From positions 15,792 to 79,621 of the forward strand of contig NW_019218428.1 of the NCBI RefSeq assembly GCF_002571385.2: a stretch of 63,830 nt of DNA, given 5' to 3'. Source of the stretch: Stylophora pistillata. Lineage: Eukaryota. Under the pieces are notes generated by a model. That model searched no databases, had not been told where the DNA came from, and saw only the letters and a list, made by a program, of their open reading frames with translations. The stretch's first letter is position 1. Every line of letters begins with the position of its first letter. The translations under genes and the position numbers were made by a program. This document shows positions 38,301 through 63,471 of the stretch, in pieces.

Positions 38301-41300
38301 TTGTGTTCATTAGATTTCTGATTTATCTCTGTTTTGGAAGAGTATATTCTTAACAAAGTCCACCTTTCTCATTAAATCTCAACAGTTCACAACTCGGTCA
38401 CACCAGAAAGAAAATGACCATTCAAAACAAAAAATGCACAAAGATGATTGCTGTTTTAACTGAAGTTCTGGAGAATCTGACTCTAAACTCACTTTCAGTG
38501 CTTGTAATAAACCTTACCTACTCCAAAGAATAATGGAGAAATAAAAATTGGCATCACATTTCCAAATCCAGGAACCAACAGAGGAATAAGACATGCTCTG
38601 TATACAAGCTCTTCTGTGAGGGGGGCCTATAGAAATGAATTTAAAACTTGAGAAAAATCATACATAAATTAGTCTCTGAGTAATCTGCACACAGTTCACT
38701 TCTCAGAATGTAACCAAATGCATTAATTATACAGCAAAAATCCTAGTCTTTATTTTGGTATTGTTCAGAGTTGATCAAACCTTCCTAATGCGCAAGCAAT
38801 TGACTGACTGACTTATTTATAAAAATGAAATCAATTAGAAAAAATAACTGAATATGTTAAGAACTTGAAAACTGGTTTAACCTACCACAAGGTAGTTCCT
38901 CAAGTTAATGGCATTAACCCAACTGGATGGATATTCAAGAAAGCCTGGCAAAAAAAAAAAAACAATTAAAATTACTCCCCACCCATTCCTGTGACTGAGG
39001 TAACATAGTTAGAAGCCATACACACTAACATGAATTACTGAATATGTTACACAGAAATTCACCTTTCACATTCTCAGAGTCCCCACTGAAATAAAGCAAT
39101 GTAATGGGTCCTAAAAATAAAATCTACAGTGGAGAAATAAAAGCAAATATGTTATAAGTTTGAAATAAATTGCACTTCTTTTTTTCAAAAAATTGCTTAA
39201 ACTGTTAAGAAAAACTAAATAGAATAATAAATAACATTACATCTTACCACTGTTAAAACCAAAGGAAAAATAATTGATATAATTATATTTTCCACATGAA
39301 TCCCTAAATATTTCCAAAGGGAGATACCCTAAAAAGCAATACAACAGAGATGTTATTTCAATCTGAAATAAAACATAGAATTTACAATAACCTAAAGAAG
39401 GAGAGATTTTTGATACACACAGAAACAAATACTTCAAGTTGGTGGGGTTGCTTTCTTTAAGTTTGTAGCCATATATGAAGTGTTTAGACTCAATTCCATT
39501 GATATACTGTACCTCTCTCTAAGGGGATCCCACTACAAACTGCAATATCACTGCAGACCTCTTAAAAGAGATGCAGGTCGGTGCAAACTCAAGTGCTAAT
39601 GATGGTGAAATTTAAGAATCTTCATACAATTTTCACACTTATTTCTCAAGTCAGTTTCATATGTAGGTGAAAGGCACAGTGAAGAGTATATAAAAAATGA
39701 TAACACAATAGAACAAGTTGCCCTTTTAGAAAGAAGCTCTTGATTGTTAAACAAATTCTCCTTGTCAGCACCTTACTAAGTGTATAGAGAACAGTATGGA
39801 GAATATGCATGCTGATGTTAGGGTGTTCAGGTTAAGAGTGCCTGTCAGTGAGAAATATAGATACACTTACATTGTAATCTAAAGATCCATCAGCCCACAG
39901 CCAAACATATAGTGGAGCCAACAAAGATATGAAAAAGACACTTCTGAATCTTTGCTTGATGGTTTTAGGATGATCCCTGCAGATAAATAATTGAGCAAGA
40001 TTAATAAAATTTAAGTCCATAATTACAGAACAATCATGGAATAGTTTCTCACTAAAAGACTGCCTCAGATATTAATTAATTCAACAGTTTTTCTGAATAG
40101 GCCGGGTGTTCTGCAAGAAAAATGCAAGAGGTAATCCACTTACACAAAATGCAATATGTTCAGCCCATAATTTTACATTGATAATATATATCACTTAGAT
40201 TCTCAAGATTCTGCATTTTTCTAACTCAGAATAATTAAAAAATGCCAGCGCTGTGTGACAAATATGGTAATTACCAAATAAGAAACACTCACTCTGGTAC
40301 GCTGCCTGATTAAGGTGGTACCGAAGGCTAAATTTGGTGACTTCTATCTCAATTTGTGAATACAGTGGAACCTGTATAATGAGCAGTTACCCACAGGGAA
40401 AGGCACAGGGTCACCACTTAACACAGGTAAACCACTTAACACAGGTTGACCACTTAACACAGGTTGACCACTTAACACAGGTTGACCACTTAACACAGGT
40501 TGACCACTTGACACAGGGTAACCACTTAACACAGGTTCACCACTTAATACAGGTTTCACAGAAGAGGGGTATTAATAAACTATAAAAAAAGCTATTTTGG
40601 GTCATTATTGTTGACCCAATGTACAAAACCAGTTACTCAAAAACATGCTCAAAAATACAACTGGCGTTGATTTCAGGAGAGAAACATGAGCTAAAAGTTA
40701 CTTGAAATATTTTGTTTTTGGTTTTCTTTAAGTAGACATTGAATTCAAGTGGAAGACAATTCAAACAGTCAGTTGGGACTAAGTAATGGATGACCATGTC
40801 TGCTTGTCATAGAGGTGACTGCCTAACAGAAGTGAAAACTGTTGCATAATCAGCAATTCATTTGAGCAATCATTAATCCTATTCATTCCCCCATTCACGC
40901 CTTGTCACGATATAAATACTTGTTAATTAGTGCCCATTGTCCCAACCGTAATATATGCAGAAATGCTACCAAATAATTATATAAACTCGTGAGTTTAGTT
41001 CTACTGAGAGGATTATTACTTTGATTAGTGTGTGTATGAATGAAAAAACTTTTTTTGCAGAACCAAGTACTTAACAAAAACTACAGTAATTGAGGGGAAA
41101 CAAATTCGAGACTTTGACAACTGACCATCTAATACGGTGCAGATCAATACAAGTTTGACTGAATAATTATATCTTTACTGACAGATTTGTTACGATGACT
41201 TGAAATTTTCACAAGGGATATATGATTATACACATAATTTGAAAAAAAAATTTTAATTTACTCAGTGCTATGGAATTTGTGGTATTTTATGGAAATAAAG

Positions 41301-55380: not shown

Positions 55381-57808
55381 TTACAACATAGCATTGATAC
55401 ATTGTAGTTAAAGAGTTTTCTTTTATTTAACAAATCTTATGTGACCAGAGAGAACAAGCGCGCGGAAAAATAGTCTTTGCATATGCTCACGTCAGCAGCG
55501 TACACCCATGGGCAAATGGGGGACGCTAAATTGACCAATCAGAGCGCGCGCTTTACTTTGGTTATGTTCTAAAATGATCTCACGTCCACAAGGAACTTTC
55601 TAACTTAGAGATACCATGCAGTTCTCCTTGAGTTGGATTTTTTATTCATTGTTTCGCTCCTTGCAGCCTTCCCCGGTCATGGTCCAGGTATAGTGAAAAA
55701 AAAAACCTTGTTCTCTTTCTTTTTGCAATTTAAATTTAGTTTTGAACAGAAATGGTGTCAGTACGAGTTTTACGAAGCGTGCCTACCGTCTTTTGCACTT
55801 GATCTAAAGGTCTTCAAGACATCCACAAGGCTTTTCCGGTGTTGTTCGGGACATATTGCAGCACCACTCAAGCTCGCTAGTAAGTAGAATGCCATCAAAC
55901 GTTATACAGTGAGCCGAATGATTCGCGTCCTCTGATTCGTGTCGTATAAAAGTTTTAGTAGCGTGGACGGGTCTCGATTCCATCACAGAGTTAAGAGGCA
56001 GTCAAAATAGGTTGAGAGCAAGAGCGATAGACCCGCTTAAAGCTGTTGCACCACTTTTCCTTGTTCTCGTCACACGTTTTTGAGTAATAAGTGATCTTTA
56101 ATTTGACAGACTCAATGACAGCAAACTGAAAGCTATTGGTTAATTTTCATTTGGCTTCCAAAAATGATTGGGACGACAGGGCCAAATAACGAAATTCTTA
56201 GGGGTTGTACAAAGTTTCAGTGGAGGTTGTTGTGTAAAAGAAAAGCGGCAAGGAAAACGACGCCTCGAGACAACAGAGTAGGAAATCAACCATGCGAACG
56301 ATTGAAAATCCGTTTCCGCTGCAAAACCTAGCGCATGCGCATACGTTATTCAGCTCTGTCGATCTGGGCGACATTTTCGAAGCAGGTGATGGCAAAAAGA
56401 TAAAAGCTGAAGCTATTTTCTTTTCCTGTTGTTTCGAAAAGCAAATATTTTTGGTATGTTGAGAACTGCATTCGAGATGTTGCCTCTGCCCTTACTTGGA
56501 CTATAAATATGATTCACAGCGGATTAGAAGATGAACAAGGTCGGTTAAAAATGAAAAAAATGATAATAAATTTATTTACCGATACCTCTTTATTTCAAAA
56601 ATTATTCGATAGTTTGTTCAGTTTACTTCTCTGTCAACTCTTCTTTTCCCTTCTGTCGCCCTTTTCTCAAACTCCTTTTCCCAATTAAATGCTTTTGAAC
56701 TAGGCCTTGATCCTTTACACGACATTTAGAACAAGTTCTTCAGAAGCTTCCTTTTGAAATATATTTAAACTCATCAGAACTGTCACCCAAAATTCGTCCA
56801 ATGAAGTTCCGAACCATCATTTCTTCAGACAACGTTAGAAGTTTGCGATCCAAATAAATCCAACAACATTTTAAGAGTCAGTTTGGATTCTCACAACAGT
56901 GTGTATTTAATGAGGTAGAATATATAACTAAGTATAAATGACCCTATTTCAACTTTTCGAAACAGATCTCAATTATCCAACTGAGGTTCTCCGCGAACAG
57001 CGCTTGAAGAAAGTCACAGAGCTTCTGACCATTGTTATAATGTCGGCTGTTTGTCTCACAATAAATCACTCGACTCTGAGCCGGAAAAACTTCCTGTCGT
57101 AAATAGGTGAAAAGAACTCTTTGAACGGGTTTGGAAGGGAGCTTAAAGAACTGGGGAGAGAAAGTGAAGTGGAGGCTCCGGATAATTGATTTGAGAATAA
57201 AAACCACTACCACTTTTAAACTACTGTTTTTTTGTAAAGCTCGTTTACACAGCCACAAATAGTTCTGTTTGGAACTTACAATAAGAGAGGGAAAGTTTAA
57301 CAGGACAATTCAAATCGTAAAATAATCTTCTCTTGCTTGTATATTTACTTTTTCACGAAAAGTTATCGAGATAATATGCATGACCCAGTGTATCGAGCTC
57401 GCTTTCAAGCATATTGAACTTCTGCTATTCGCAGCTTTTTTTCTCATTCTGGAACATCGTTTTATTTAAGGTACATCGACGTTGAGAGTTTTGCTTACAT
57501 CTTTCCACAAGAAGAAAGTGGCAAATCGTATTCACAAGCAAACTTTCACCAGAAGACAAAACGACAGTTAAACCTAAAATGTTAAACGACATCATTAACT
57601 TTATTAGCAAAGCCGTGTGCTTGTTTTTTAGTTCGAACTAGAAAAGCTTAGAAATATCAGTTTACAAATATCAACTCCATGGAATAAAAAAGTAATTTTC
57701 TTCTTCGTTTCCCCATTGACTAGCGCGGACCAGCTTGTAAAGCGAAATAAAATTAAAAGTATCTCCGTAGATGCCTTAGACATTTAGATTTGCCACTGAA
57801 GCATAGCA

Positions 57809-60081
57809 TTAAAAGATCAAAGGGATCTGTTCGTCCTCATTGAATGTGATGGATGCTTGCTTAGGATCCAGGGTCCAATCACTCTTGACCGATGTGCCAT
57901 TCACCTCTTGAATTTTCTGCAAGACAGGTATAATTGAATTGAGGGGATTAAACAACTTTACCTACGAGTCATAGCAATACGGCCAGGATATGAAAGTGGA
58001 AGCTAAACAGGTGTAACTACTGTTCAAAGATATCGACCTTTTTTGTTTTTGTTTTTGTTTTTATTTCTCTTTTGAGATCAGGCTAATTTAAGCAGATTAA
58101 CTTTGTTTTTTCCGAACAGTTCTTGTATTACTAGGTGTTGTACATCGACAATATACACATACTTTGTGATCTGGTTTCAGGCCTTTCGCTGGGACCTTCT
58201 TCTCCTTCCCGACTCCTGGATTTTGGACCTGCTCGTTCCCGTTGACTCTGATGGATGCATCTTTCACCACTTGAATTTTCTACAATTCAGATGCAAGTCA
58301 CTTTAATAGGAAATTTGAAAAGTAAGCCTTACTTTTCATTATGGAATAATTACCCTAACTGTTTAAATCTCTCTGGTGCAAGCAAATCGACCACATTGAC
58401 CGTCGATCTTTTTAAAGCATACACTGACAATGTAAACATACTTTCTGTCCTGGGGCCAGGGGTTTTGATGGGGGGTACGTCTTCCTTTTCTCGTCTGAAG
58501 CCTCTAGTGTCTCCTCTTCCGTTACAGATATTGGTAGTATTGGTTGAATCTGCTCTTCACAACAGATACAAATCAAGTTAATGGGAAATTAAATGGGATA
58601 ACAAAGTTATGAGTTACAAGAAAGCTAGCACAGCCTGGAAAATGGAGCTGAAGCTCGATCAAATGCACATTTAAACACCTTAAAAGACCGTACAGCATAC
58701 AATGACAATGTAAACATACTTTGTGTCCTGGTCTCAGGGGTGTTGCTGGGGGGTACGTCTTCCTTTTCTCGTCTGAAGCCTCTAGTGCCTCCTCTTCCGT
58801 TATTGGTATCGGCAGTATTGCTTGGGCCTGCTTGTCAACGCAGATACAAATCAAGTCATTGGGAAATTGAATGAGATAATAAAGCTTTGAGTTGCAACAA
58901 AAACAGCGCAGCCTGTAAAATGGAGCTGAAGCTCCCTCTAATGCACAGTTTCGTACTTCTAAAGACCGAATAAAACACTATGACAACGTAAACATACTTT
59001 GTATCCTGGGGCCTGTGGTGTTGATGGGCGGTACGTCTTCTTTTTATCGTCTAAAATTTTCCGTGTCTCTTCTTCCATTAATGTTGGATGGCCCTGCTCG
59101 TCAAGGAAGATACAAATAAATTATATTGAAATTTTTAATACGATGAATTAACCTATGATGACTCATAATAACAATAAAAAAACACAGCTTGGAATATGGA
59201 GCTGAAGTTCGATCAAACTCACATTTACGGGCTTCAAAAGACGATACAGCTTGCAATGACAATGTAAACATACTTTGTGTCCTGGTCTCAGGGGTGTTGC
59301 TGGGGGGTACGTCTTCCTTTTCTCGTCTGAAGCCTCTAGTGCCTCCTCTTCCGTTATTGGTATCGGCAGTATTGCTTGGGCCTGCTTGTCAACGCAGATA
59401 CAAATCAAGTCATTGGGAAATTGAATGAGATAATAAAGCTTTGAGTTGCAACAAAAACAGCGCAGCCTGTAAAATGGAGCTGAAGCTCCCTCGAATGCAC
59501 AGTTTCGTACTTCAAAAGACAAAATAAAACACGATGACAATGTAAACATACTTTGTATCCTGGGGCCTGTGGTGTTGATGGGGGGTACGTCTTCTTTTTC
59601 TCGTCCGAAGCCCTTAGTGTCTCCTCTTCCGTTACTGGTATTAGCGGTATTGCTTGGATCTGCTCGTCAACGCAGATACAAATTAAATTAAATGGAAATT
59701 AAACAAAATGAGATAATAAAGCTATGAGTTCCAAAAAAAAAGAACAACAGCACAGCCTGGCAATTAGAGTAGAAGTTCAATCAAATGCACAGATACGCAC
59801 TTCGAAAGACGATATAGTGTACATCGACAAAATACACATACTTTGTATCCTGGTTTTAGGGGTTCTGCTGGGATCGCCTTTTTTTCTCCGGCTATAGATT
59901 GCAGTGTCCTTGCTTCATTGACTGATGTCAGCCATTCTTCTGCATCTTGGATCTCCTCGTAAAGGTTCGTAGTTATGTGTTCTCCATGTTGTAACAGGGT
60001 CTTCTCTTGAGAGTTCACCGCACTGGAGAACGTTGCATGACTGCACACCAATATAAACATTAAAACAGCATAGCACATCAT
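57809..60081 (-). CDS. Uncharacterised secreted multi-repeat precursor (330 aa, 8 coding exons, all introns phase 0); candidate peptide prohormone
   Basis: Exons 59842-60081 (signal peptide MMCYAVLMFILVCSHATFSS...), 59552-59659, 59274-59381, 58998-59093, 58720-58827, 58442-58549, 58163-58279, 57809-57916. Every donor is AAA|GTATGT and all exon lengths are multiples of 3, with no internal stops. Confidence 0.8.
58400..59860. repeat. Tandem duplication of about 277-bp exon+intron units, with a 554-bp higher-order duplication
   Basis: Exons 58720-58827 and 59274-59381 appear identical and are offset by 554 bp. The flanking introns are near-identical. Confidence 0.9.
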
Positions 60082-62525
60082 CTGTATACAACCGATAAAA
60101 AATGAAATTGAGAGCTTTCCAAAACCACAAGAAAAGAAATAAAGAGGAACGAATCTTTATTATTAAAGTTCACCTAAATTTCGATAAGTTCTCGGAAGAA
60201 GTAATCTTTGATATCATGTTTGGTAGCGTCTTTTTTCCCAAGTTCCCAAGAAAACCTAGTTTTTTCCCCATTCTGAAGGATAGAAATCCCAAACACTTTT
60301 CCATTTGGATTTACTCTATTATCCACGCGATCTTTTAAAGACTTATTGAATGCCATGATGTCCTACATTATTTGATCACCATGGCCATGGTCAGCAATCA
60401 TTTCAGACCGTTTGATTTTGTCCCTTATTATATCTCAGAGAAATTTAAAAAGCAAATCATTTATTTCTTTTAACGATTTGAAACGTAGACATACTGATGA
60501 CATACTACAGACCAATTGGAAAGGCAGTTAGCGTCTTTATAATTGTAATCCTTCCAGGAAGCGTTAATCTCTTGTTTTGCTTTTTGTTCAGATATTTGAA
60601 AGCAATTTTTTAGTCAGTTTTGGGAAGGCCAGTGTTGTATATGGCAAGGTTTTTAGGATTTCTAAATGGCTTCTCTTGACCAGTGATTCTCGTGACCACT
60701 ATGTCGCGTCTTCCCGCACTATGATAGGATAACGCAAATAAAAAGATGCTAAGAAACCCGCGTTTTTTCTATTTCATCTTGTTTTTTAAAAGCTCTCGAT
60801 AAGGAACTTTGTCTATTTCAATGTTCAGTGTTTGGACTCCCCAGTTTTCATCAGTTTCTACCGCTTATCACGATTTCTCTTGACTCGACGATCCGAATGA
60901 TTCGATCAGTTAATCGAAAAATCGATGTAAAATCGAAACACATTTTTACTATTAACATCTAGCTATTTAGGATGTGCACCCTCTGCAAATAAAACAGAGA
61001 TTTTCTGGATGCGAGAGTGGCTTCCTGACGATAATACGTCATAGTAGAACAGCTTACCCTTTCTTATGCTGTCGCTTCCACCAGGGGTAGTAGCAAACGA
61101 AAAATAGATTTCGCGGAAAGGAAGAAACATTTTTGTTCGTGAAAGAAAACTCGTGACTCTTCGTGACAACAATGTGACTGGGTACACGTATCTTTTACTT
61201 ATTTAAATTACACATGAGAAAAATACGCGCGTCTGATTGGCTGAAAAGAGTGCAGTGAAATTTAATCGTTCATGGTTACCTCAAAAGGAAAAAAAGGTGG
61301 GGAAACTAAGACTAGAGACTTTTCGAACAAAAGTTTATTCTATATAACGACTATTCCGTTGATCAACCTTTTTTTTTAAGTTTTATCAAGAGTTATAAGC
61401 GTTAAAAACACCGCGACTAAGACTCAAAGCATGTCGGAGCACACGTGATGGGGTCAATGATCGGTCGTTGTTTAGTAAATCAGCTCACACTATACTCCCC
61501 AAAGATCGCGCCTTTCCCCACAACACAACCGCAAGGTATATGTATTTTATTATCTGTAGAGGAAATACTGTGCTACTGGAAACTGTTAATTACCACGTAG
61601 CCTCAAAAGGGCATGGCTCTGACTGCCTGAAAAACGATCAAGTTCAGTCTAAGCTGTTCACAGGAATCAGCAGTGCAGTTACTTCGCGGTTGAAATTTTG
61701 AACGCGTAAATAAACGCGGTTATAGAATGAAGACACCAAATTCACCCCAAATGTCTCATATCTATTAAGGACATTATTTGTTTTGAAAAAAATCTATTAA
61801 AGGTAGATCTAGAAATAATCGTGACAAACTGTTATTTATTTCAATTTCAAAACTAGCCGACTACAATTATCTGTGACTAAAATATATATTTATTCATTCG
61901 TGTTAGTTAATTTGAAGCTAACCTTGGTAACGGAAAATTGCCTCGAGCGATCATTCAAATTGACTTTGAATTATTCTTTAATTTAAAAGCCTAATGATTT
62001 GTTTCTGTGTAATATAATATTTCGATCAATATTACTCATATTTTCGCCATGCTGCATAAACGCGACACCAAATTGATTTGCTTTCGCGGGGGCTGTTTCA
62101 TCTTGATAAACATAATTAAAAACCATTGAATATAAATGTTCACTGATTAAATTTTCTTTAGGAGGATTAAAATCAGATATTGAAATTTTAGCTAACCCTG
62201 ATAAACGAACTCCTTTTACTAAACACATCACATGAAAAGCACAAAAGCTCGATCACGCAGAGTTTGATTGCCGCGATCAAAAGGTTGTGGTCTCCCCAAT
62301 CATTCTGTATAAATCAATAAATATATATTTTTCATTTCCGTTTTGAGCCTTTTTACCTGCGGCAAAACCACTAGTTATTCGTGGAATGGCTAACGGTGTC
62401 AACAATGTACGTATTTAAGTAAATATTTGATCTGTCGGTGCTTTCGACGTGAATTCGATAAATACAGCCGTCGAAAATACTTCCATACCTTAAGCAAACG
62501 ATCTAAGTCGGCAAACGTTCCTGCT

Positions 62526-62903
62526 TTACATTGCACTGATTCCCGAGTCAAAGCTTTCTGTCGCCTCCGAATCGTTCAGGATGTCATCTCCATCGACCCT
62601 TGTCATGTTTTTAATCCTTTGCCGAAGAGCTATGAGCTGACGTGCTAGATTTTTGTCTTGTAATTGTAGTTCTTGAAGTTCCTTACGTACCCATGTAATA
62701 GCGTTCTGTAGATCTTCTTGTCTTTCGGCTATGGTTGCTCCCTCGCGCTGTATTACGGGAGCTTTGTTGCCCCTTTCACTGACCATTTTTTCTCCATTGA
62801 CCGCGCTGTCATTAAAATACTCCCTCGTTTCTGGCTCGTCGGTAAAATTAACACGGCGTTGTTGTTCGAGTTTCGCATCATCAGTTTCATTCGATCTGTT
62901 CAT
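62526..62903 (-). CDS. FAM167-like protein (single coding exon, 125 aa)
   Basis: AITWVRKELQELQLQDKNLARQLIALRQRI matches the FAM167 coiled-coil signature (WLRKELxEMRLQDQQLARQL) as I recall it. Confidence 0.75.
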   Translation of the reverse strand: MNRSNETDDAKLEQQRRVNFTDEPETREYFNDSAVNGEKMVSERGNKAPVIQREGATIAERQEDLQNAITWVRKELQELQLQDKNLARQLIALRQRIKNMTRVDGDDILNDSEATESFDSGISAM

Positions 62904-63471
62904 CTTAAAGATGGGTTATACGAAGAGATAAGTCTTTGGAATAGTTTCTCGGTGACCTGTCGAATATTGCTCATCAAATGATTCTTTTTCGAGTAGGTTG
63001 TGAAATGTTCGCTTTTGACTGGGGTCTACTATCACTTCCTGCGAGAGTCACGAACTCGTGTGATTTATGACTTCGGCATGTTTTGATTCTTTGCAAATGT
63101 AAATATTAACCGCTATCAGAGGCCTCTATTATTTCCTGCCAATCACATCGTCGGAATGTTGTTTGCGTGCGCATTTTAAATAAAGTTCTTCGTCACGAAA
63201 AAGTTTAATGTCTCGTGCTCCATTCTTTTCTTTCAATCGCATTTGCTGATATTCTTCACATATAACAAGTGAAACACAGAAAAAAGAATAATTGGGACTT
63301 AATTATAAGTCTAGTTTGTCGCAGCCATGTTGGTTAGCGGTCATTAAAATGGAGTGTGCGCAGCAATACCTGAAAATGAACATGGCGGACGGAGGCTAAA
63401 TCTTCCGATCTTTATCTAAGTAAACTCGTGTATCCATTTGCAGTGCGTTAGCTGCCCTGGTCTAGGAAAAA

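What the first reader, a model, noticed from the sequence alone, without database searches (positions are those of the whole stretch)
57809..60081. Candidate novel peptide precursor: acidic spacer + K(R/K)K + Pro-rich peptide repeats
After a signal peptide, each unit reads …EEEx(L/R)xxxD(E/D)-K(R/K)K-peptide. The peptides are TYPPSTPQAPGYK, TYPPATPLRPGHK (twice), TYRPSTPQAPGYK and TYPPSKPLAPGQK, plus the divergent AIPAEPLKPGYK and VPAKGLKPDHK. Acidic spacers, basic cleavage sites and repeated Pro-rich cores are hallmarks of neuropeptide and antimicrobial polyproteins. TYPPATPLRP-G recalls sea anemone Antho-RPamide I (LPPGPLPRPamide). However, Gly is followed by H/Y/Q and then K rather than directly by K/R, so amidation would be non-canonical and the products may end in PG-Y/H/Q. 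The ORF track does not reveal this protein.
Basis: partly seen in the sequence, partly recalled or inferred. Interest (0 to 1): 0.85.

Follow-up and report, generated by a model that had tools for sequence, protein, structure and literature searches.

The report
Coral-specific secreted repeat protein, one module per exon
This is a real, spliced and well-expressed gene found only in the coral Stylophora pistillata; it encodes a secreted, disordered protein of seven duplicated exon modules (acidic block, lysine cluster, proline-rich block) that may be cut into small peptides, but it is not a classical amidated neuropeptide gene and NCBI already annotates it.

Summary
Window 60081..57809 (minus strand) holds an 8-exon, all-phase-0 gene for a 330-aa protein. 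It has a signal-peptide-like N-terminus and seven modules: acidic block, KK or K(K/R)K, then a Pro-rich block ending in K. RNA joints in four runs from four studies confirm all seven introns, and stranded reads show minus-strand RNA.

The modules arose by exon-plus-intron duplication with a 278-bp period and a recent 554-bp two-unit copy. The organism is Stylophora pistillata. NCBI already models the gene as LOC111343498, "adhesive plaque matrix protein-like", so the locus is not new, but I found no paper on it.

No paralog exists in the genome, and no homolog outside S. pistillata turned up among 1.84 and 5.8 billion proteins. There is no Pfam domain, and the fold prediction is mostly disordered.

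The amidated-neuropeptide and Antho-RPamide reading fails the published criteria. There is one G-K/R site, Gly is not invariant, the C-termini vary, and S. pistillata has a separate canonical RPamide gene.

- **Best reading (0.4):** a pre-pro-polyprotein releasing non-amidated Pro-rich peptides, apidaecin-like in design.
- **Close rival (0.35):** an intact polyampholyte matrix or adhesive-type protein.

Processing is untested. This scan noted the same stretch before (s1-777851).

The parts
59842..60081 (-). Coding exon 1 (240 nt, 80 aa). It holds the start ATG at 60081, a hydrophobic signal-peptide-like N-terminus (h-region CYAVLMFILVC, then SHA), a helix-prone N-terminal region, and the first, divergent module ...GEKK-AIPAEPLKPGYK.
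   Evidence: Kyte-Doolittle 9-residue mean 2.2-3.3 over residues 1-14. Acceptor AG at 60083-60082 and donor GT at 59841-59840. Joint 59659/59842 was seen in X1, X4, X21 and X24. The AF2 helix 5-66 has pLDDT up to 90 in residues 41-60.
59552..59659 (-). Coding exon 2 (108 nt, phase 0): acidic block, KKK, TYPPSTPQAPGYK.
   Evidence: joints 59659/59842 and 59380-59384/59551-59552.
59274..59381 (-). Coding exon 3 (108 nt): acidic block, KRK, TYPPATPLRPGHK. A NAGNAG alternative acceptor 3 nt upstream (59384) adds one Gln.
   Evidence: joints 59380/59551 (13+6 reads) and 59384/59552 (6+7 reads).
58998..59093 (-). Coding exon 4 (96 nt): shorter acidic block, KKK, TYRPSTPQAPGYK. Its 3' half and the following intron are the recent copy of exon 2's.
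   Evidence: the introns after exons 2 and 4 are 96% identical; joints 59092/59273 and 58826-58830/58997-58998.
58720..58827 (-). Coding exon 5 (108 nt), 100% identical to exon 3; a NAGNAG acceptor at 58830.
   Evidence: joints. Joints to exons 3 and 5 cannot be told apart, which explains the 'goes back' and 'skips 724' rows.
58442..58549 (-). Coding exon 6 (108 nt): acidic block, KRK, TYPPSKPLAPGQK.
   Evidence: joints 58549/58720 and 58279/58442.
58163..58279 (-). Coding exon 7 (117 nt): old, divergent module KIQVV...GKEKK-VPAKGLKPDHK.
   Evidence: Joints 58279/58442 and 57916/58163. The 3' end of this exon plus its intron start is 76% identical to that of exon 1 (family D4).
57809..57916 (-). 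Coding exon 8 (105 nt plus TAA): C-terminal tail KIQEV...IPLIF, a truncated module without a Pro-rich block; it holds one NGT sequon.
   Evidence: joint 57916/58163 in all four runs.
57585..57808 (-). Main 3' UTR. AATAAA signals lie at 57605 and 57466. Depth falls stepwise below about 57690 and about 57590. One contig runs on to about 56974, where an ATTAAA lies at 56911.
   Evidence: depth table and record 1 of X1.
61058..61130 (-). Non-coding leader exon A, with donor GT at 61057-61056, spliced to the acceptor at 60082. A CCAAT-like and a TTTAAAT-like element lie at about 61245-61200. The ATG at 61130 is out of frame and would open a 79-codon overlapping uORF if it is transcribed. The transcription start was not mapped.
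   Evidence: Loose ends at 60082 in X21 (6 reads), located in the window; sequence; frame.
62489..62526 (-). Alternative leader B. This is the 3' UTR of the upstream 125-aa gene, with donor GT at 62488-62487, joined to the same acceptor in one RNA contig (a conjoined or read-through transcript).
   Evidence: Loose end at 60083 in X1, located; sequence.
58139..59893 (-). Tandem exon-plus-intron duplication array: period 278 bp, a recent 554-bp two-unit copy, introns of 162-182 nt.

Best explanation
Shown: this is an expressed, correctly spliced protein-coding gene of Stylophora pistillata (NCBI LOC111343498) on the minus strand. It encodes a protein of about 330 aa that is Cys-free after the leader, largely disordered, and begins with a signal-peptide-like segment. 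The protein was built by serial duplication of one phase-0 exon. Each module is an acidic, helix-prone block (net -3 to -6 in the five core units, with an S-D-E in four of them), then a Lys-rich basic cluster (KK or K-K/R-K), then an 11-13-residue Pro-rich cationic block ending in Lys.

Inferred, and my preferred mechanism: it acts as a pre-pro-polyprotein. After signal-peptide removal in a secretory cell, convertase or trypsin-like proteases cut at the basic clusters and possibly at the terminal Lys. This would release a small family of related, protease-resistant Pro-rich peptides (TYPP..P..PG-Y/H/Q, with or without K). The acidic blocks would serve as charge-neutralising pro-pieces. One gene would then yield several peptide isoforms, and exon copy number and sequence would vary between individuals. 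That design matches insect apidaecin polyproteins. The products would be non-amidated. They are more likely secretory, host-defence or epithelial peptides than classical neuropeptides.
For: - **Gene model:** eight phase-0 exons with GT..AG introns. All seven joints appear in RNA, exon depth is 20-80 against intron depth 0-2, and stranded mates lie almost only on one strand. This amounts to about 15-30 reads per kb per million reads in X21 and X24 (my arithmetic).
- **Secretion:** a hydrophobic N-terminus followed by S-H-A.
- **Basic clusters:** every one of the seven modules, including the two old divergent ones, keeps a basic cluster exactly at the junction of acidic and Pro-rich blocks, and a terminal K. 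None of 23 expressed exonic variants touches these residues; the one variant in a cluster is synonymous, AGG>AGA.
- **Charge:** charge alternates between -4 to -6 and +4 to +5 per block in the five core units (exon 4's acidic block is -3).
- **Protease resistance:** inside the Pro-rich blocks of the six best-conserved units, every internal K/R is followed by Pro (K-P, R-P), so it resists tryptic or convertase cleavage. Basic substitutions occupy 3 of 3 variable positions that precede an invariant Pro and 0 of 3 others (read; chance about 1 in 20).
- **Constraint:** against a 96.8%-identical relative contig, exons differ at 5 of 456 sites and non-coding sequence at 28 of 587 (Fisher p = 6e-4). 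Among the similar units 2, 3, 5 and 6, exons are 83-100% identical and their flanking introns 54-78% outside the recent two-unit copy, where the intron before exons 3 and 5 is 96% identical.
- **Precedent:** the honey-bee apidaecin gene also has several exons, each encoding one peptide, with high variation between individuals (PMC3415428; PMC11549390). Loose ends show extra variant repeat exons in other individuals, for example ...PSAPLKPGQK.
- **Weak lead:** the nearest clusters by protein-language-model features are apidaecin polyprotein, semenogelin and polysialoglycoprotein, all proteins cut into repeats. Scores are 0.76-0.78, which is chance level.
Against: - No peptide product has been observed, so processing is pure inference.
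- The residue before the Pro-rich block is always Lys. Known convertase sites usually end in Arg (KR, RR), and the published cnidarian criteria list KR, RR and R only. There is no furin R-x-K/R-R motif.
- The C-terminal single Lys is followed by Ile, Ala or Gly and has no basic residue at -4 or -6, so monobasic cleavage is not predicted (my knowledge of the monobasic rules).
- The acidic block is at least as constrained as the Pro-rich block: dN/dS is about 0.45 in the spacer for two of three comparisons and at least 1 in the Pro-rich part (very few sites). That is the opposite of typical peptide precursors.
- The Pro-rich blocks carry only +1 to +3 charge without the lysine cluster, which is weak for antimicrobial peptides.
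- They lack the apidaecin pharmacophore, and PF00807 is not hit.
Confidence: 0.4

Rival explanations
1. An intact, or only trimmed, secreted block-polyampholyte. The protein would stay in one piece and work extracellularly as a matrix, mucus or adhesive-type protein. Alternating anionic blocks (possibly phosphorylated at S-D-E) and cationic Lys/Pro/Tyr blocks would drive self-association or coacervation. The [ST]-Y-P-P-[ST] and Y-K motifs would be hydroxylated or cross-linked, as in mussel foot protein 1.
For: - NCBI's automatic name is 'adhesive plaque matrix protein-like'.
- Composition is E 10.9%, P 10.9% and K 10.6%, against R 3.0%.
- Lys rather than Arg is used at every conserved basic position.
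- Tyr sits next to Lys (KTY, GYK). An X-P-G triplet occurs in 6 of the 7 Pro-rich blocks (PDH in exon 7), with a further NPG outside the block in exon 7, and S-x-E occurs in four spacers.
- One module per symmetric phase-0 exon is common in modular extracellular proteins.
- The acidic block is as conserved as the Pro-rich block.
- The prediction is disordered, with a short helix per spacer.
Against: - There are only 5-7 motifs, separated by 20-residue acidic spacers, and the pI is 6.2. Mussel foot protein 1 has long uninterrupted decapeptide arrays and is very basic (my knowledge).
- Tyr is missing from the two old modules, and the second Tyr is often His or Gln.
- The protein is absent from the 60-protein S. 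pistillata skeletal proteome, in both the main table and the held supplements.
- No Pfam or structural domain was found.
- The pattern of K-P and R-P inside the blocks with cleavable Lys at the flanks is unexplained by this reading.
Confidence: 0.35
2. A classical amidated neuropeptide preprohormone related to Antho-RPamide. Neurons would release ...PLRP-amide or similar peptides.
For: A signal peptide and repeated similar peptides are present. Y-P-P resembles the X-P-P N-terminal protecting group of cnidarian neuropeptides. YPPATPLRPG matches LPPGPLPRPG at 5 of 10 positions (my comparison with the sequence quoted in PMC7523074).
Against: - The published criteria need at least three GKR/GRR/GR sites; this protein has one G-K, and it lies outside the peptides.
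- Gly is followed by H/Y/Q and then K, so no C-terminal Gly would be exposed.
- RPG occurs in 2 of 7 units only.
- Gly is Asp in exon 7 and Arg in an expressed variant.
- The C-terminal residues, normally the pharmacophore, vary.
- S. pistillata already has a canonical RPamide preprohormone, giving pQKNPWRPamide and three others.
- No orthologue was found in any other cnidarian, which is unusual for a receptor-coupled neuropeptide.
Confidence: 0.04
3. Another role for a young orphan secreted protein, such as gland-cell or cnidocyst content or a digestive-cavity protein. The repeat pattern would mainly reflect recent duplication and charge balance, not a specific processing or adhesive mechanism.
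For: - It is a lineage-restricted single locus.
- About 13 of 23 expressed variants are non-synonymous, so constraint is only moderate.
- The inner units are recent copies, so their shared motifs are not independent evidence.
Against: - Exons are about four times more conserved than flanking non-coding DNA.
- The basic cluster and terminal Lys also survive in the old divergent modules.
- Expression is robust and splicing clean.
Confidence: 0.17
4. Not a real protein-coding gene: a repeat artefact, pseudogene or non-coding RNA.
For: None beyond the absence of homologues.
Against: - A 993-nt open frame runs across eight exons, all in phase 0.
- All splice joints are seen in poly(A) RNA from several studies.
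- Exon conservation exceeds intron conservation.
- There are independent NCBI and GenBank models.
Confidence: 0.02

Closest known systems
Insect apidaecin-type pre-pro-polyproteins (proline-rich antimicrobial peptides; Pfam PF00807)
   Same: Both have a signal peptide and pro-region followed by several copies of a short Pro-rich cationic peptide, each flanked by an acidic spacer and a basic site. In Apis mellifera the gene has several exons, each encoding one peptide, with high variation between individuals (PMC3415428; PMC11549390). It is the nearest cluster by language-model features, at a chance-level score of 0.78.
   Different: There is no sequence homology: PF00807 is not hit, and Api-like peptides were found only in insects. 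The spacer here is 20 residues and helix-prone, not EAEPEAEP. The basic site is K-K/R-K placed before the peptide, not RR after it. The conserved PRPPHPRL pharmacophore is absent. Charge is lower. Processing is unproven.
Mussel adhesive plaque matrix protein (foot protein 1), the source of NCBI's automatic name
   Same: Shared short motifs [ST]-Y-P-P-[ST], K-P and Y-K; both are rich in Lys, Pro and Tyr, secreted and disordered (the motif comparison is from my memory of the AKPSYPPTYK decapeptide, so it is a lead only).
   Different: There are only 5-7 motifs, each separated by an acidic 20-residue block. The pI is 6.2, not strongly basic. The organisation is one module per exon. No homology beyond composition. 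No evidence for DOPA or Hyp.
Cnidarian Antho-RPamide and other amidated neuropeptide preprohormones
   Same: A signal peptide, several related short Pro-containing peptides, and an X-P-P-like start.
   Different: It lacks G-K/R amidation and cleavage sites. The basic residues sit on the N-terminal rather than the C-terminal side. The C-termini vary. The peptides are 12-13 residues, against about 6 for most established cnidarian neuropeptides (PMC7523074). S. pistillata has a separate genuine RPamide gene.
Coral skeletal organic matrix proteins (acidic SOMPs)
   Same: Secreted, Glu-rich, disordered and lineage-restricted, with S-x-E motifs.
   Different: It is not among the 60 proteins of the S. 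pistillata skeletal proteome. It is not Asp-rich and has no known SOMP domain.

Membership tests
Cnidarian amidated neuropeptide preprohormone (criteria of PMC7523074) | Signal peptide for ER entry | tested here: met
   Hydrophobic core CYAVLMFILVC followed by S-H-A; 9-residue hydropathy 2.2-3.3. This is heuristic only, because SignalP was not available.
Cnidarian amidated neuropeptide preprohormone (criteria of PMC7523074) | At least three GKR/GRR/GR processing and amidation sites | tested here: not met
   There is one G-[KR] in 330 residues (position 280, in exon 7, outside the peptides). The units end in G-Y/H/Q-K or D-H-K.
Cnidarian amidated neuropeptide preprohormone (criteria of PMC7523074) | At least three highly similar peptides directly preceding those sites | tested here: not met
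   Five similar peptides exist, but they precede no G-basic site.
Antho-RPamide family | C-terminal Arg-Pro-amide, encoded as R-P-G followed by basic residue(s) | tested here: not met
   R-P-G occurs only in exons 3 and 5 and is followed by H-K. The other units read A-P-G, K-P-G or K-P-D. An expressed variant has R in place of G.
Apidaecin-type PrAMP polyprotein (PF00807) | Sequence match to the apidaecin family, or the conserved C-terminal PRPPHPRL | tested here: not met
   The Pfam scan at E up to 10 gives no PF00807 hit, and the motif is absent from the translation.
Apidaecin-type PrAMP polyprotein (PF00807) | Repeated peptide, acidic spacer and basic site after a signal and pro-region; proteolytic release of the peptides | tested here: inconclusive
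   The architecture is present. Release of peptides is not testable with these tools.
Mussel adhesive plaque matrix protein (foot protein 1) | Long uninterrupted tandem array of a Lys/Pro/Tyr decapeptide; strongly basic protein | tested here: not met
   Five to seven motifs are interrupted by acidic blocks, and the pI is 6.24. No relative other than S. pistillata proteins was found.
Mussel adhesive plaque matrix protein (foot protein 1) | Tyr to DOPA and Pro to Hyp modification | not testable with these tools
   This needs protein chemistry.
Coral skeletal organic matrix proteins | Detected in cleaned skeleton by mass spectrometry | tested here: not met
   XP_022806420-23 and PFX15487.1 are absent from Table 1 and from the held supplements of the 60-protein S. 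pistillata skeletal proteome. Absence from one proteome is weak evidence.

The most novel reading that the evidence does not exclude
The gene is a Stylophora-specific, exon-modular pre-pro-polyprotein that evolved independently of insect apidaecins. It would release a new class of short Lys-flanked, Pro-rich peptides (TYPP..P..PG-X), possibly hydroxylated or O-glycosylated, that act in host defence or microbiome control at the coral surface or in the gut cavity. Peptide number and sequence would be tuned by exon duplication, gene conversion and copy-number variation between individuals.
Probability: 0.2. Interest if true: 0.7.

Novelty: new variant of a known kind. Interest (0 to 1): 0.45.

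Why it matters
Reef corals have few characterised secreted effector peptides, and lineage-restricted secreted genes are thought to underlie species-specific traits such as mucus, defence, attachment and calcification. This is a clean, well-expressed orphan gene with a transparent origin: one exon duplicated seven times, and still varying between individuals.

If the modules are released as peptides, it would be a convergent, non-insect example of the "one gene, many Pro-rich peptides" amplification design, and a candidate coral defence or signalling peptide family. If the protein stays intact, it is a compact natural block-polyampholyte with mussel-like Y-P-P and Y-K motifs. Either outcome is directly testable with peptidomics and a cell-atlas look-up.

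The work also corrects the public models. All four NCBI isoforms carry a 17-residue intron-derived insert that reads barely support, and the GenBank model fuses the gene to its upstream neighbour.

Tried and rejected
- **Paralogs in the same genome:** a six-frame search with one repeat exon found only this locus; the next hit had E = 4.3.
- **Homologues elsewhere:**
  - An HMM of the four distinct repeat exons against 1.84 billion representatives gave only S. pistillata sequences plus one unrelated 890-aa repeat protein that matches part of the spacer.
  - Exon 1 against 5.8 billion proteins found one 96%-identical ORF fragment.
  - The NCBI model P0002 found only its own isoforms.
  - JGI metagenome contigs gave 594 pattern matches, none confirmed.
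- **Limits of the cross-species search:** I could not search Pocillopora, Seriatopora or other coral assemblies directly, and a single diverged 36-aa exon would fall below threshold. "Restricted to S. pistillata" therefore means no detectable homologue in these collections.
- **Domains and fold:** Pfam gave only sub-threshold noise. The AlphaFold2 single-sequence model had mean pLDDT 53 and was too poor for a fold search, so none was run.
- **Literature:** the peptide strings, the accessions, the LOC number and "adhesive plaque matrix protein" plus "coral" gave nothing relevant. The cell-atlas paper's held supplements do not contain the accession, so the cell type stays unknown.
- **Leader exon A:** I first read its ATG as an in-frame N-terminal extension. 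Placing the GT donor correctly (exon ends at 61058) shows it is out of frame.
- **Odd joints:** the "goes back" and "skips 724" joints are ambiguous placements between the identical exons 3 and 5, not back-splicing or exon skipping.
- **Joined model not searched:** I sent no self-joined spliced model to any search tool. Exons were searched by reference. Whole-protein searches, the Pfam scan, the atlas search and the fold used NCBI's models as returned by the tools (P0002, P0008), which contain the 17-residue insert. A joined translation was made only inside local scripts, for composition, motif counts and the uORF frame check.
- the single read-laying run did not cover the leader exons, so the transcription start is unmapped.
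Full report
**What is there**

Reading the minus strand of window 57700-60200 and translating by script gives an eight-exon gene:
- Exon 1: 60081-59842
- Exon 2: 59659-59552
- Exon 3: 59381-59274
- Exon 4: 59093-58998
- Exon 5: 58827-58720
- Exon 6: 58549-58442
- Exon 7: 58279-58163
- Exon 8: 57916-57809

All exons are multiples of three, so every intron is phase 0. Every intron starts with GTATGT and ends with a pyrimidine-rich ..CAG or ..TAG. Introns are 162-246 nt. The joined frame is 993 nt, or 330 aa.

Exon 1 encodes a hydrophobic leader (MMCYAVLMFILVCSHA...) plus a first divergent module. Exons 2-6 each encode one full module. Exon 7 is an old divergent module, and exon 8 is a truncated module forming the C-terminus.

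**It is transcribed and spliced as modelled**

A k-mer search found the stretch in poly(A) RNA-seq runs from several studies labelled coral metagenome or organism A. They share 0.30-0.45 of the sampled words, which is close to the exonic share of the stretch.

Laying two contig sets and two raw-read sets gave the following:
- All seven introns appear as joints with CT..AC ends on the plus strand, that is GT..AG on the minus strand.
- Each joint is supported by several independent read starts.
- Exon depth is 20-80 and intron depth 0-2.
- Almost all first mates lie on one strand.
- From the read counts I estimate roughly 15-30 reads per kb per million reads, which is solid expression.

Both acceptors of a CAG-CAG (NAGNAG) pair at exons 3 and 5 are used about equally, adding or omitting one Gln. 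The "goes back" and "skips 724" joints are ambiguous placements between exons 3 and 5, which are 100% identical.

Loose ends reveal extra variant repeat exons in other individuals, for example ...PSAPLKPGQK. The array therefore varies in content within the species.

**5' and 3' ends**

Reads run from the acceptor at 60082 into sequence found at 61058 and upward (leader A). One contig runs instead into 62489 and upward (leader B).

With the GT donor placed properly, the ATG at 61130 in leader A is out of frame. It would open a 79-codon overlapping uORF if transcribed. Leader B is the 3' UTR of the upstream 125-aa gene, so that contig is a conjoined transcript.

The transcription start was not covered by my single reads call. 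Depth steps and AATAAA signals at 57605 and 57466 mark the main poly(A) sites.

**Origin**

Tandem Repeats Finder reports a 278-bp unit, 5.1 copies, score 1432. The repeat finder shows copies in register at 276-290 bp and a recent 554-bp two-unit duplication at 95% identity.

Exons are better conserved than their introns. Among the similar units 2, 3, 5 and 6, exons are 83-100% identical and introns mostly 54-78%; within the recent two-unit copy the introns reach 96%. The 3' ends of exons 1 and 7, with the starts of their introns, are each other's closest relatives at 76%. The outer modules are therefore old and the inner five young.

**Identity and distribution**

The repeat profile found only three proteins among 1.84 billion representatives. 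Two are from this locus and one is an unrelated repeat protein.

A search with the hit P0002 returned only its isoforms, named by NCBI "adhesive plaque matrix protein-like" and "uncharacterized protein LOC111343498" of Stylophora pistillata. The accessions are XP_022806420-23, and the GenBank model is PFX15487.1. The gene is therefore already annotated.

None of the public models equals the major transcript:
- The four NCBI isoforms carry a 17-residue insert from intron 3, where depth is under 5% of exon depth.
- PFX15487.1 is fused to the upstream gene.

There is no paralog in the 398-Mb assembly. No hit came from exon 1 except a 96%-identical fragment, none from JGI metagenomes, and there is no Pfam domain. 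The literature held here has nothing on the peptides, accessions or gene name.

**Constraint**

A 1068-bp contig from a related sample is 96.8% identical. It differs at 5 of 456 exonic sites against 28 of 587 non-coding sites (p = 6e-4).

Of 23 expressed exonic variants, 10 are synonymous. None alters a basic cluster or the terminal Lys. Changes do hit the Pro-rich core (Q>L, A>S, R>K, G>R) and the spacer (E>Q, T>A, E>G, L>P).

Between paralogous units, dN/dS is about 0.45 in the spacer for two of three comparisons and at least 1 in the Pro-rich part. The site counts are tiny.

**Protein properties**

- Composition: E, P and K each about 11%, R 3%; pI 6.2; no Cys after the leader.
- Charge: core modules alternate between net -3 to -6 and +4 to +5.
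- Motifs: four spacers carry S-D-E, X-P-G lies in 6 of the 7 Pro-rich blocks (exon 7 reads P-D-H there and has an NPG outside its block), and there is one G-K site.
- Fold: AlphaFold2 without an alignment is low-confidence (mean pLDDT 53). It predicts a helix in each acidic block and disorder in the Pro-rich blocks.
- Protease pattern: in the six best-conserved units every internal Lys or Arg of the Pro-rich block precedes Pro, while the flanking Lys residues do not (read).

**Interpretation**

The amidated-neuropeptide reading fails the field's own criteria (PMC7523074):
- At least three GKR/GRR/GR sites are required; this protein has one G-K, outside the peptides.
- Gly is not invariant.
- The C-termini vary.
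- S. pistillata has a separate canonical RPamide preprohormone.

Two readings remain close.

I slightly prefer the polyprotein reading (0.4). Points in its favour:
- Basic clusters are placed invariably at module junctions, even in the old modules.
- The charge-neutralising acidic blocks fit a pro-piece role.
- The core is protease-resistant while the flanks are cleavable.
- Repeat exons vary between individuals.
- The honey-bee apidaecin gene is a precedent, with separate exons each encoding one Pro-rich peptide (PMC3415428; PMC11549390).

Points against it:
- The residue before the Pro-rich block is always Lys rather than Arg.
- No predicted site lies on the C-terminal side.
- The spacer is well conserved.

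The intact polyampholyte or adhesive-like reading (0.35) explains the Lys preference, the Y-P-P and Y-K motifs, the S-x-E sites and the conserved spacers. It does not explain the small number of interrupted motifs or the neutral pI. The protein is also absent from the published 60-protein skeletal proteome.

The language-model neighbours (apidaecin polyprotein, semenogelin, polysialoglycoprotein) score at chance level and are only a lead.

**Limits**

- There was no SignalP, no cross-species coral genome search, no cell-type data and no proteomics.
- I sent no self-joined spliced model to any search tool. Exons were searched by reference, and whole-protein searches, the Pfam scan, the atlas search and the fold used NCBI's models as returned by the tools.
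My tests agree with it.

**Verdict**

The gene is real, expressed, restricted to this lineage and already annotated, but uncharacterised. Its architecture resembles a polyprotein, processing is unproven, and the neuropeptide and RPamide link is not supported.

Noticed in passing
window 62527-62904, minus strand: The upstream neighbour is a single-exon ORF of 125 aa (MNRSNETDD...GISAM). It is coiled-coil-like, with only sub-threshold Pfam hits (FAM167, CENPU). Identical copies occur on dozens of Logan contigs. Its 3' UTR holds a splice donor (62488-62487) that one RNA contig joins to the first coding exon of the repeat gene. The GenBank model PFX15487.1 fuses the two genes.
   Followed up: partly
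window 61128-61130, minus strand (leader exon A): An upstream ATG in good context (acaaaaATGt) lies out of frame with the main start. If transcribed, it opens a 79-codon uORF that overlaps the main ATG, which could throttle translation. The transcription start is not mapped.
   Followed up: partly
window 58828-58830 and 59382-59384: NAGNAG (CAG-CAG) tandem acceptors at exons 5 and 3 are both used at similar levels, adding or omitting one Gln at the start of the acidic block.
   Followed up: yes
window 59223-59273: All four NCBI isoforms include a 17-residue extension of exon 3 (VCLHCHCKLYRLLKPVN) from an alternative GTGAGT donor inside intron 3. Read depth there is under 5% of exon depth, so it is at most a minor form.
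   Followed up: partly
window 58549-59274 (loose ends at 58720, 59093, 59274): RNA reads from other individuals continue into repeat-exon variants that are not in this assembly, for example ...PSAPLKPGQK and a unit starting IRPILPIPV. A linked set of variants at about 20% frequency maps onto exon 3 (L>P, A>S, R>K, G>R). This points to copy-number or allelic variation of the array.
   Followed up: partly
window 58033-58075: A (TTTTG)n microsatellite lies inside intron 7; the reads tool skipped it as a repeat.
   Followed up: no
window 40334-40585: A short tandem repeat is open on both strands (HLTQVD... on plus, PVLSGQ... on minus). It is probably a minisatellite, not a gene.
   Followed up: no
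P0004 (890-aa protein from the representative library): An unrelated, highly repetitive protein whose repeat QPIPVICVREE matches positions 2-16 of the acidic block in eight places (E = 2e-4). I judge this compositional, not homology.
   Followed up: no
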